A stretch of 32,000 bases of DNA from Bigelowiella natans nucleomorph (GCA_000002455.1 DQ158856.1:90001-122000), one strand, 5' to 3'. Positions 20,419 through 21,041 are shown, numbered from the stretch's first letter. Program-made: numbers and translations. Notes: generated from the sequence alone by a model not told the origin.

Positions 20419-21041
20419 CTACCATTCACCACATGGTCTTATGTCGACCAACTGCATTAAAAGAAACCATACCATTATGGTAATAATCAATGATGGATCT
20501 AACACTCCAAAAATAGGAGGTATCCAACCTCTAAAAAAATAAATTAGATTATCAACCGGCTTATTATTTATAATCATTACCACTAGTAGCGGATTAGACT
20601 TTTTCTTTTTTTTCCAAGAAGATGATTGAGTTTCGCGAACTTCCACTAAATATAACCAATAGTTTCTGGTTAATATAATACAATAAGATAACTATTTATA
20701 TTAAATTTTACAGTCAACATTCTATAAATAAACATTATGATTAATCTATAAAAAGCTGAAAGATAATATGATAAGTAAGGTGACAAATCATGAAAAGCTT
20801 TCATGATATCTAATGACGAGTGCTTACCTAAAACAGTCAGCAGTGACAAGTCAGATATTGCAAAAAACAATGAAGATCTACTACATGATGACGTTCTTTG
20901 GAATTGAATTATTTTTTTTGAAAATTTTTTATTGAATTTTGTTGTTTTTAATTTAGTCAAGCATTTTTTTCTATTGAATAACGCTTTTGACTCGTGAGAG
21001 AGTAATTTGTGTTGTTGTTTTATTAATTGTGAGTAAACCAT
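20419..21041 (-). CDS. YGGT-family (YlmG/Ycf19/CCB3-like) membrane protein with a basic transit-peptide-like N-terminus
   Basis: A 20-nt intron at 20692-20711 joins the two ORFs in frame. The C-terminal FFRGWIPPIFGVLDPSLIITIMVWFLL matches the YGGT signature FRxxIPPxxxxLDxSP plus a hydrophobic helix. The first ~60 aa are K/S/Q-rich. Confidence 0.7.

What the first reader, a model, noticed from the sequence alone, without database searches (positions are those of the whole stretch)
20419..21041. Intron-split YGGT/YlmG-like plastid membrane protein, possibly a second TIC-associated subunit
Seen: the two ORFs fuse through a 20-nt intron into a basic leader, hydrophobic helices and a FRGWIPPIFGVLDPS signature. 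A 21-nt in-frame intron (VMIINNK) may also be present. Known: YGGT proteins include YlmG/Ycf19 and CCB3, and a YlmG protein was modelled in Chlamydomonas TOC-TIC cryo-EM structures. Inference: together with Tic56, this suggests the nucleomorph keeps an unrecognised set of TIC subunits among its orphans, which bears on why the nucleomorph is retained.
Basis: partly seen in the sequence, partly recalled or inferred. Interest (0 to 1): 0.78.

Follow-up and report, generated by a model that had tools for sequence, protein, structure and literature searches.

The report
Hidden spliced YlmG-like nucleomorph gene
A small three-exon gene in the relict nucleus (nucleomorph) of a chlorarachniophyte alga encodes a very divergent YGGT/YlmG-type two-helix chloroplast membrane protein, which would add one gene to the supposedly fixed list of 17 chloroplast genes that this relict nucleus keeps.

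Summary
On the minus strand, 21041-20419 is one gene of three exons (110 + 37 + 46 codons, 193 aa). A 20-nt intron (20711-20692) and a 21-nt intron (20580-20560) are both exactly missing from a near-identical metatranscriptome mRNA (P0002/L002). A sister-species transcript (L001) lacks the first intron. It carries the second as a 19-nt, frame-breaking insert, so that insert must be spliced out there.

The C-terminal domain is under strong purifying selection (dN/dS 0.03). The basic N-terminal 80 aa evolves fast, as a transit peptide would.

The YGGT call is only partly met. Pfam PF02325 gives no hit, even on the spliced protein. Against that:
- A profile of the four known orthologues matches cyanobacterial YGGT over the whole domain (hhalign Prob 79-80%, E 1e-5; 0 of 270 shuffles reach it).
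- Its only PDB hit is Chlamydomonas TIC-bound YlmG (7vcf_H, E 0.4).
- It matches Group I (YlmG) far better than Group II (CCB3).
- It shares two motif features with CrYlmG that all 40 cyanobacterial Group I and II sequences lack.

The tree is inconclusive. Plastid targeting and TIC association are inferred, not tested. The scan noted the same stretch once before (s1-534086). Verdict: a new, divergent member of a known family, of moderate interest.

The parts
20712..21041 (-). Exon 1, 110 codons from the ATG at 21041. It covers the leader plus the start of transmembrane helix 1.
   Evidence: ORF list. Collinear with P0002 and P0001. 96% aa identity to P0002.
20802..21041 (-). Basic, Ser/Thr-rich N-terminal leader (aa 1-80), read as a transit-peptide-like presequence. 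This is an inference.
   Evidence: K+R 16, D+E 4, S+T 18. 47% aa identity and dN/dS 0.31 against L001, compared with 0.03 for the domain.
20692..20711 (-). Intron 1, 20 nt, GT..AG.
   Evidence: Exactly absent from transcripts L002 and L001. Sequence checked.
20581..20691 (-). Exon 2, 37 codons. It covers the rest of helix 1 and a Lys-rich loop.
   Evidence: 100% identical to P0002 residues 111-147. dN/dS 0.03 against L001.
20560..20580 (-). Intron 2, 21 nt, GT..AG. It is in frame here (it would read VMIINNK) and is 19 nt in the sister species.
   Evidence: Absent from L002. Retained in L001 as a 19-nt frame-breaking insert (L001:511-529). Three spliced raw reads (table 7).
20419..20559 (-). 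Exon 3, 46 codons plus a TAG stop. It covers the loop helix, the conserved motif and transmembrane helix 2.
   Evidence: 46/46 aa identical to L001:530-667 despite pS 0.66. Best-conserved part among the four orthologues (A4).
20491..20535 (-). Signature FRGWIPPIFGVLDPS (aa 156-170). This is the YGGT-type R..PP..G..D motif just before helix 2.
   Evidence: G158, P161, P162, F164, G165, D168 and P169 are invariant in A4. It aligns to CrYlmG YRGILPPLFGQLDFT and to the cyanobacterial FRxxIPPxGGxDFSP.
20665..20750 (-). Hydrophobic segment 1 (aa about 98-119), interrupted by intron 1.
   Evidence: Kyte-Doolittle 19-residue window peak of 1.97. Helix in both AF2 models.
20440..20499 (-). Hydrophobic segment 2 (aa about 168-187).
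   Evidence: Kyte-Doolittle peak of 2.17. Helix 90-106 of model ma2c0e52ac91e.
20416..21131 (+). Antisense overlap. The 3' UTR of the convergent RPB1 mRNA runs through the whole gene to a poly(A) site after 21131.
   Evidence: Contig X3 ends in A21 after 21131. Contig X1 spans 19800-22219 with only the plus-strand eIF4A-like introns removed.

Best explanation
This is a real, expressed, single-copy nucleomorph gene of three exons. Its 193-aa product has a basic, fast-evolving N-terminal presequence of about 80 aa and a strongly conserved C-terminal domain of about 110 aa with two transmembrane helices.

The domain is a very divergent member of the YGGT family. It is closest to Group I (the YlmG/Ycf19 type) and, within what could be compared, to the green-algal YlmG that sits on Tic20 in the Chlamydomonas TOC-TIC structure.

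The most likely working is as follows, and these steps are inferred. The protein is made in the periplastidial compartment. Its presequence takes it across the two inner plastid membranes through Toc75 and Tic20, both of which are also nucleomorph-encoded. It then inserts as a helical hairpin in the inner envelope. There it docks on Tic20 and helps to shape or gate the lateral side of the import cavity, as proposed for Arabidopsis YlmG1.

Shown here: the gene model, splicing, purifying selection, conservation and synteny across chlorarachniophytes, and statistical similarity to YGGT Group I and to CrYlmG. Inferred: plastid targeting, inner-envelope location and Tic20 binding.
For: Gene and splicing:
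- L002/P0002 lack both introns, L001 lacks intron 1, and there are spliced raw reads.
- The neighbouring eIF4A-like gene shows three verified 19-nt introns, so the intron size class fits.

Selection: dN/dS is 0.03 for the domain and 0.31 for the leader, with exon 3 identical at 46/46 residues at saturated dS.

Family:
- An exhaustive phmmer search of 1.84 billion representatives finds only chlorarachniophyte-type orthologues: P0001, P0003 (Amorphochlora amoebiformis, annotated 'Uncharacterized protein') and P0004.
- P0004 lies convergent to RPB1, as in the window.

YGGT kinship:
- hhalign of A5 against 39 cyanobacterial YGGT gives Prob 78.6, E 1.7e-5, score 33 over 80 columns.
- Controls: reversed 11.6; 150 column shuffles max 20.7; 120 local-block shuffles max 27.1.
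- An HMM of cyanobacterial YGGT aligns P0002, P0003 and P0004 in the same register.

Subtype:
- A5 against Group I gives Prob 80.5, against Group II gives Prob 5.9.
- The A5 HMM scores CrYlmG at 14.3 bits. Cyanobacterial Group I reaches at most 10.4 and Group II at most 2.9.
- CrYlmG itself is Group I: 78.5 bits against Group I, 40 bits against Group II.
- [RK]-G-x-x-P-P (in P0002 and P0004; P0003 has Ile in place of R/K) and the PP-x5-D spacing occur in CrYlmG and the chlorarachniophyte proteins. Neither occurs in any of the 40 Group I and II cyanobacterial sequences.

Other pointers:
- The only PDB hit of A5 is 7vcf_H YlmG.
- Foldseek rank 2 is 7xzi_D.
- The first Atlas shape match is a chlorophyte YGGT cluster of 196 aa.
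- The top cluster by protein-language-model features is Ycf19.

Function model: YlmG binds Tic20 TM3 in 7vcf, and AtYlmG1 is envelope-localised and recruited to translocation intermediates (PMC13399175).
Against: - Pfam PF02325 gives no hit at all.
- Single-sequence phmmer against PDB and against 1.84 billion proteins finds no YGGT protein.
- The PDB profile hit has E 0.4, which is not significant on its own.
- hhalign probability is about 80%, not above 95%.
- The register of helix 1 is ambiguous, and the R-x-LLSWFP motif of helix 1 is not recognisable.
- The nearly invariant Pro of D-x-S-P is lost.
- AF2 models are of low confidence (pLDDT 59-65), and helical-hairpin matches are not discriminating (VIA Z 5.1 for 7xzi_D, rank 4 of 9).
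- A protein-language-model search with P0004 gave nothing.
- The ML tree puts the family on a stem of 3.75 substitutions per site, and AU does not reject a sister relation to Group II (p 0.34).
- No eukaryotic YLMG1, YLMG2 or CCB3 sequences could be compared, apart from CrYlmG through the PDB.
- In Arabidopsis, YlmG1 is not a stable TIC subunit.
- No localisation or interaction data exist for this protein.
Confidence: 0.6

Rival explanations
1. It is a YGGT protein that does not work at the translocon. It would be a Group I YlmG/Ycf19-type protein of thylakoid or inner membranes, acting in nucleoid distribution, plastid division or photosystem biogenesis. Those were the older roles proposed for YlmG and Ycf19.
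For: The homology evidence is the same as for the best explanation. Kabeya et al. 2010 tie Group I YlmG to nucleoid distribution in chloroplasts and cyanobacteria (PMC2923531). AtYlmG1 is not a stable TIC component. A YGGT protein of Toxoplasma is needed for apicoplast inheritance (PMC12358420).
Against: Li, Zhao and Nakai 2026 place AtYlmG1 exclusively in the envelope and explain the nucleoid phenotype as secondary. The derived motif features are shared with the TIC-bound CrYlmG and not with the cyanobacterial Group I proteins.
Confidence: 0.17
2. It is a Group II YGGT, that is a CCB3 orthologue, working in haem attachment to cytochrome b6.
For: The AU test does not reject a clade with cyanobacterial Group II (delta lnL 2.9, p 0.34). 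hhalign against Group II still gives E 0.006 over the motif.
Against: hhalign gives Prob 5.9 over 28 columns against Group II, compared with 80.5 over 80 columns against Group I. A5 HMM bits for Group II are at most 2.9. The Group II hallmarks TWYPQ, GGVDITPIIW and LLGQQG are absent. The Group II clade (100/99) excludes the family in the free tree.
Confidence: 0.05
3. It is a lineage-specific two-helix nucleomorph ORFan that is not homologous to YGGT. The PP..G..D motif and the hairpin would then be convergent or chance resemblance, and the protein might work in the periplastidial compartment or the nucleomorph envelope.
For: There is no Pfam hit. Only four relatives are found among 1.84 billion proteins. 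The fold models are poor and the structural matches are non-discriminating. About 40% of nucleomorph genes are ORFans (PMC4494063).
Against: The profile-profile score is 6-8 SD above composition-preserving and hydrophobicity-preserving shuffles. Five different methods independently point to YGGT/YlmG. The match is collinear over both helices and the loop.
Confidence: 0.15

Closest known systems
Chlamydomonas reinhardtii YlmG (Simp3), chain H of the TOC-TIC supercomplex, PDB 7vcf and 7xzi, with its Arabidopsis homologue YlmG1
   Same: Both have a presequence and a single two-helix YGGT-type domain, at similar length (187 against 193 aa). The motifs YRGILPPLFGQLD and FRGWIPPIFGVLD share the Gly after Arg and the one-residue-longer PP-to-D spacing. 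CrYlmG is the only PDB hit of the family profile and Foldseek rank 2. Both are of green-lineage origin.
   Different: The helix-1 motif RVLLSWFP and the D-F-T-P turn are not conserved. The loop between the helices is longer and Lys-rich. Similarity is below the Pfam threshold. The gene is encoded in a nucleomorph and has two pygmy introns. Binding to Tic20 was not tested.
Cyanobacterial Group I YGGT (YlmG/Ycf19 type, such as the S. elongatus SylmG1 class), alignment A8
   Same: The whole domain is collinear (hhalign 80 columns, Prob 80.5). Both have two helices, a loop helix, and an R..IPP..G..D motif.
   Different: Identity is 19-20%. Cyanobacterial proteins have PP-x4-D and no Gly after Arg (0 of 25). 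They have no N-terminal leader.
CCB3 / AtYLMG3 / cyanobacterial Group II YGGT, alignment A9
   Same: Same superfamily and the same PP..GG.D core.
   Different: Only 28 columns align (Prob 5.9). The Group II signatures are missing. Its function, cytochrome b6 haem attachment, is not indicated here.
Syntenic and shared nucleomorph ORFans of chlorarachniophytes (Suzuki et al. 2015, PMC4494063)
   Same: It is annotated as uncharacterised in A. amoebiformis (P0003), is fast-evolving and AT-biased, and keeps its position next to RPB1.
   Different: Here a known family and a plausible function can be assigned. It is not on the published list of 17 plastid-associated genes.

Membership tests
YGGT (Pfam PF02325, CCB3_YggT) | Match to the Pfam HMM at or above the gathering score (27 bits) | tested here: not met
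   There is no PF02325 hit at E<=10 on the single exons, on the natural spliced protein P0002 or its domain, or on P0001, P0003 and P0004. A six-frame scan of the genome gives 0 hits.
YGGT (Pfam PF02325, CCB3_YggT) | Profile-level similarity over the whole domain of about 80 residues | tested here: met
   hhalign of A5 against A7 gives Prob 78.6, E 1.7e-5, score 33.0 over 80 columns. Controls: reversed 11.6; 0 of 150 column shuffles and 0 of 120 local-block shuffles reach 33.
YGGT (Pfam PF02325, CCB3_YggT) | Two transmembrane helices joined by a loop, with the R-x-x-I-P-P-x-G-G-x-D-x-S-P motif before helix 2 | tested here: inconclusive
   Two hydrophobic segments are present. The two invariant YGGT columns, the first Pro and the Asp, are kept in all orthologues. 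The Arg is kept in P0002 only (Lys in P0004, Ile in P0003). The nearly invariant Pro of S-P is lost, and the family has D-P-S/G-L instead.
YGGT (Pfam PF02325, CCB3_YggT) | Helix-1 motif (R-x-L-L-S-W-F/Y-P) | tested here: inconclusive
   The aligned Arg is not invariant in the family, and three alternative registers exist (R99, R107, R119). No S-W-F-P motif is present.
YGGT (Pfam PF02325, CCB3_YggT) | YGGT fold | tested here: inconclusive
   The AF2 models have pLDDT 59.3 and 64.5. The first Atlas shape match is a chlorophyte YGGT cluster (TM 0.53, 87 residues). Foldseek gives 7xzi_D at rank 2 with E 3.9. VIA gives Z 5.1, no better than unrelated hairpins.
Group I YlmG (the type found on TIC in Chlamydomonas) | Closer to Group I than to Group II (CCB3) | tested here: met
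   hhalign gives Prob 80.5 against Group I and 5.9 against Group II. A5 HMM median bits are 7.4 for Group I and 1.5 for Group II, with CrYlmG at 14.3. The tree alone is not decisive: Group I side 53/79, AU p 0.34 for Group II.
Group I YlmG (the type found on TIC in Chlamydomonas) | Derived motif features of green-lineage YlmG ([RK]-G-x-x-P-P and PP-x5-D) | tested here: met
   PP-x5-D is present in CrYlmG and in P0002, P0003 and P0004. [RK]-G-x-x-P-P is present in CrYlmG, P0002 and P0004; P0003 keeps the Gly but has Ile in place of R/K. Both are absent from all 40 cyanobacterial Group I and II sequences, and PP-x5-D occurs in 3 of 9 other Cyanobacteriota YGGT. It could not be checked in plant YLMG1 and YLMG2.
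Group I YlmG (the type found on TIC in Chlamydomonas) | Inner-envelope location and contact with Tic20 TM3 | not testable with these tools
CCB3 (Group II YGGT) | Group II signature (TWYPQ ... GGVDITPIIW ... LLGQQG) | tested here: not met
   These columns are invariant in A9 and absent from all chlorarachniophyte members. hhalign covers only 28 columns, Prob 5.9.

The most novel reading that the evidence does not exclude
The chlorarachniophyte nucleomorph may encode a coherent membrane core of the green-type plastid import gate. That core would be Toc75, Tic20, this YlmG-type Tic20 partner and, if the scan's other note holds, Tic56. On this reading the relict nucleus is retained largely because these hydrophobic or co-assembling translocon parts must be made inside the periplastidial compartment. 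The canonical count of 17 plastid-associated genes would then be an undercount hidden among the ORFans.
Probability: 0.25. Interest if true: 0.75.

Novelty: new member of a known kind. Interest (0 to 1): 0.55.

Why it matters
[quoted passage not shown] It contains no YGGT gene, and the Amorphochlora orthologue is filed as an uncharacterised protein.

A conserved, strongly constrained YlmG-type gene would extend that set. It would also put a second or third inner-envelope import-related membrane protein next to Tic20. That makes testable whether a secondary green plastid still uses the Tic20/Tic214-type translocon with its YlmG accessory.

The case also shows that nucleomorph ORFans can be extremely diverged known families. 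Profile-profile methods can recover them, but only once the pygmy introns have been removed correctly.

Tried and rejected
- **Pfam scans.** Every exon, P0002, and P0001, P0003 and P0004 gave no YGGT hit. The WLS-like_TM hit (24 bits) vanished once intron 2 was removed, so it came from translating the intron. The Cap4_nuclease hit (20 bits) falls in the Lys/Asn-rich leader and the Strabismus hit (about 10 bits) in the C-terminal domain; both are below cut-off and were discarded.
- **18-nt GT..AG candidate in exon 1.** This is not an intron.
- **phmmer against PDB.** Exon 3 and the P0002 domain gave nothing relevant.
- **Word-based homologue searches (3) and the exhaustive search (1).** These found only P0001 to P0004. 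P0005 is a spurious repeat protein.
- **The search for related loci in metagenomes.** This returned only the L002 contig again.
- **RNA reads.** The one read-laying run shows no joint for intron 1. The abundant RNA over the gene is the antisense RPB1 read-through, and minus-strand depth at intron 1 is only about 2. This neither supports nor refutes intron 1 in this strain; the support comes from L002.
- **Protein-language-model search with P0004.** No usable hit.
- **ML tree and AU test.** Not decisive.
- **Structure searches.** Not discriminating for a helical hairpin.
- **Complex prediction with Tic20.** Not run, because the nucleomorph Tic20 exists here only as several tiny exons.
- Exons were searched by reference, dN/dS was summed exon by exon, and the natural transcript product P0002 served as the full-length stand-in. 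P0002 differs from the window by 4 residues, all in exon 1.

Full report
**Setting.** The window is C1:90001-122000 of a 372,870-base genome in three contigs with about 25% G+C. Its neighbours carry 19-nt introns. This is a chlorarachniophyte nucleomorph. By size it fits Bigelowiella natans, which is my inference. It is not Amorphochlora, whose orthologue is only 27% identical.

**The observation.**
- On the minus strand there are two ORFs, 21041-20670 and 20646-20419.
- A 20-nt GT..AG stretch (20711-20692) separates 110 codons of exon 1 from the frame of the second ORF.
- A word search with the second ORF found P0001, an MMETSP transcript product that reads straight across the predicted junction.
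- A search with P0001 found P0002, a 193-aa product of a JGI metatranscriptome contig (L002) about 98% identical to the window.
- L001, the sister-species transcript, lacks intron 1 but retains intron 2. There the intron is 19 nt and shifts the frame into a stop. The 46 codons behind it encode a peptide identical to the window's exon 3, so removal of that intron is obligatory.
- In the single read-laying run, three raw RNA reads of the same species label stop at 20560 and continue with the letters found at 20582 onward. That is the intron-2-spliced form (table 7).
- An 18-nt GT..AG candidate in exon 1 is not an intron.
- The model is therefore exon 1 21041-20712, exon 2 20691-20581, and exon 3 20559-20422 plus TAG, giving 193 aa.

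Exons were used by reference, and P0002 was the natural full-length stand-in.

**Is it a real gene?**
- Per-exon Nei-Gojobori counts against L001 give dN/dS 0.03 for residues 81-193. Exon 3 has 46/46 identical residues at pS 0.66. The first 80 residues give dN/dS 0.31.
- The leader is basic and hydroxylated (K+R 16, D+E 4, S+T 18). Two hydrophobic segments follow.
- The gene is single-copy in the genome.
- An exhaustive phmmer search of 1.84 billion representatives finds only three relatives: P0001, P0003 (Amorphochlora amoebiformis, 'Uncharacterized protein') and P0004.
- P0004's transcript shows the same convergent arrangement with the 3' end of RPB1, with 46% identity in the RPB1 tail.
- The gene is therefore conserved in sequence and position across chlorarachniophyte genera.

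**Transcription context.**
- The RPB1 stop (20413-20415) and this gene's stop (20421-20419) are 3 nt apart.
- RNA contigs of the species run in the RPB1 sense through the whole gene to a poly(A) site after 21131, or on into the eIF4A-like gene. Only the plus-strand introns are removed in them.
- This explains why those contigs keep both minus-strand introns. The reads could not test intron 1 in this strain.

PF02325 gives no hit at E<=10 on any exon, on P0002, on the orthologues, or in a six-frame scan of the genome. A WLS-like_TM hit came from translating intron 2.

I then built an independent YGGT reference.
- A cyanobacterial 16S primer scan gave genome handles.
- PF02325 searches in 35 cyanobacterial genomes gave 51 loci.
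- I aligned them as A7 (all 39 of the first batch), A8 (25 Group-I-type) and A9 (14 Group-II-type).
- The two types match the Group I (YlmG) and Group II (CCB3) of Kabeya et al. 2010 (PMC2923531).
- CrYlmG scores 78.5 bits on A8 and 40 bits on A9.

The profile of the chlorarachniophyte family (A5) gave these results.
- It aligns to A7 over 80 columns spanning both helices and the loop (Prob 78.6, E 1.7e-5, score 33.0).
- The reversed profile scores 11.6. 150 column shuffles average 11.9 with a maximum of 20.7. 120 shuffles that keep the local hydrophobicity pattern average 13.0 with a maximum of 27.1.
- Against the whole PDB, the A5 profile has a single hit at E<=10: 7vcf_H/7xzi, 'YlmG | Simp3' of the Chlamydomonas TOC-TIC supercomplex. 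The E-value is 0.4 and the motif region aligns without gaps.
- Foldseek ranks the same entry second, though not significantly.
- The first Atlas shape match is a chlorophyte cluster of 196-aa proteins, 100% PF02325 (TM 0.53).
- The nearest cluster by protein-language-model features for P0002 is 'Ycf19' (0.81, a lead only). P0004 gave nothing.
- The AF2 models are poor (pLDDT 59-65) but show the expected order of long helix, short loop helix, Pro-rich turn and helix.

I read this as probable but not proven distant homology, at about 0.8.

**Which YGGT?**
- A5 matches Group I with Prob 80.5 over 80 columns. It matches Group II with Prob 5.9 over 28 columns.
- With the A5 HMM, CrYlmG scores 14.3 bits. 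Cyanobacterial Group I scores at most 10.4 (median 7.4), other Cyanobacteriota YGGT at most 6.9, and Group II at most 2.9.
- Two features are shared by CrYlmG and the chlorarachniophyte proteins: a Gly in the R/K-G-x-x-P-P context (P0003 has Ile in place of R/K), and one extra residue (Phe) between PP and the Asp. Both are absent from all 40 Group I and II cyanobacterial sequences.
- The ML tree keeps the family on the Group I side, but with weak support (53/79), on a stem of 3.75 substitutions per site.
- The AU test does not reject a union with Group II (p 0.34).
- I could not obtain plant or algal YLMG1, YLMG2 or CCB3 sequences, so placement within the green lineage is open.

**Function.**
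- In 7vcf, YlmG packs both helices on Tic20 TM3 at the rim of the Tic20/Tic12/Tic214 cavity.
- AtYlmG1 is essential and confined to the envelope. It joins translocation intermediates without being a stable subunit, and it is proposed to be a lateral gatekeeper (PMC13399175).
- The nucleomorph also encodes tic20 and toc75.
I did not test that.
- The most economical reading is that this protein is the endosymbiont's own YlmG, still imported into the plastid and working beside Tic20. That step is inference. Tic20 occurs here only as tiny exons, so no complex prediction was run.

**Novelty.** The published list of 17 plastid-associated nucleomorph genes has no YGGT member. Full-text searches found no paper linking chlorarachniophyte nucleomorphs with YlmG, YGGT or Ycf19. 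This is a new, highly divergent member of a known family rather than a new kind of system. The scan had noted the same stretch once before (s1-534086).

Noticed in passing
window 20416-21131 (+): The RPB1 mRNA has a 3' UTR of about 716 nt that runs antisense through the entire YlmG-like gene. It ends in a poly(A) tail after 21131, which is already inside the first codons of the eIF4A-like gene (ATG 21124). Another RNA contig reads on from RPB1 through eIF4A. The two convergent stop codons are 3 nt apart.
   Followed up: partly
window 21357, 21806 and 22111 (+): Three 19-nt introns of the eIF4A-like gene are removed in an 8.8-kb RNA contig (X1). This served as a positive control for the intron size class.
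   Followed up: partly
L001:1-720: The sister-species MMETSP contig looks like an RPB1-sense mRNA, because it ends in a poly(A) complement. Yet it lacks the minus-strand intron 1 while keeping intron 2. Either intron 1 is absent from that genome, which would be an intron presence/absence difference between close relatives, or the unstranded assembly mixed the two strands.
   Followed up: no
L001:511-529 against window 20560-20580: The same intron is 19 nt in one Bigelowiella lineage and 21 nt in the other. A 21-nt in-frame, stop-free intron could yield a 7-aa longer protein if retained. The 19-nt version gives a truncated 155-aa product (P0001), which was called as a 'complete' ORF.
   Followed up: partly
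G000:C3:82270-82494 (-), locus L163: The nucleomorph tic20 is so diverged and so cut up by pygmy introns that the Pfam TIC20 model reaches only 16 bits on one exon, with several stops inside the match.
   Followed up: no
window 20605: Ten RNA reads show one or two extra T in the T-run at 20605 (6 with +T, 4 with +TT, depth 62). This is probably polymerase or sequencing slippage in a homopolymer, the Lys run of the protein on the other strand.
   Followed up: no
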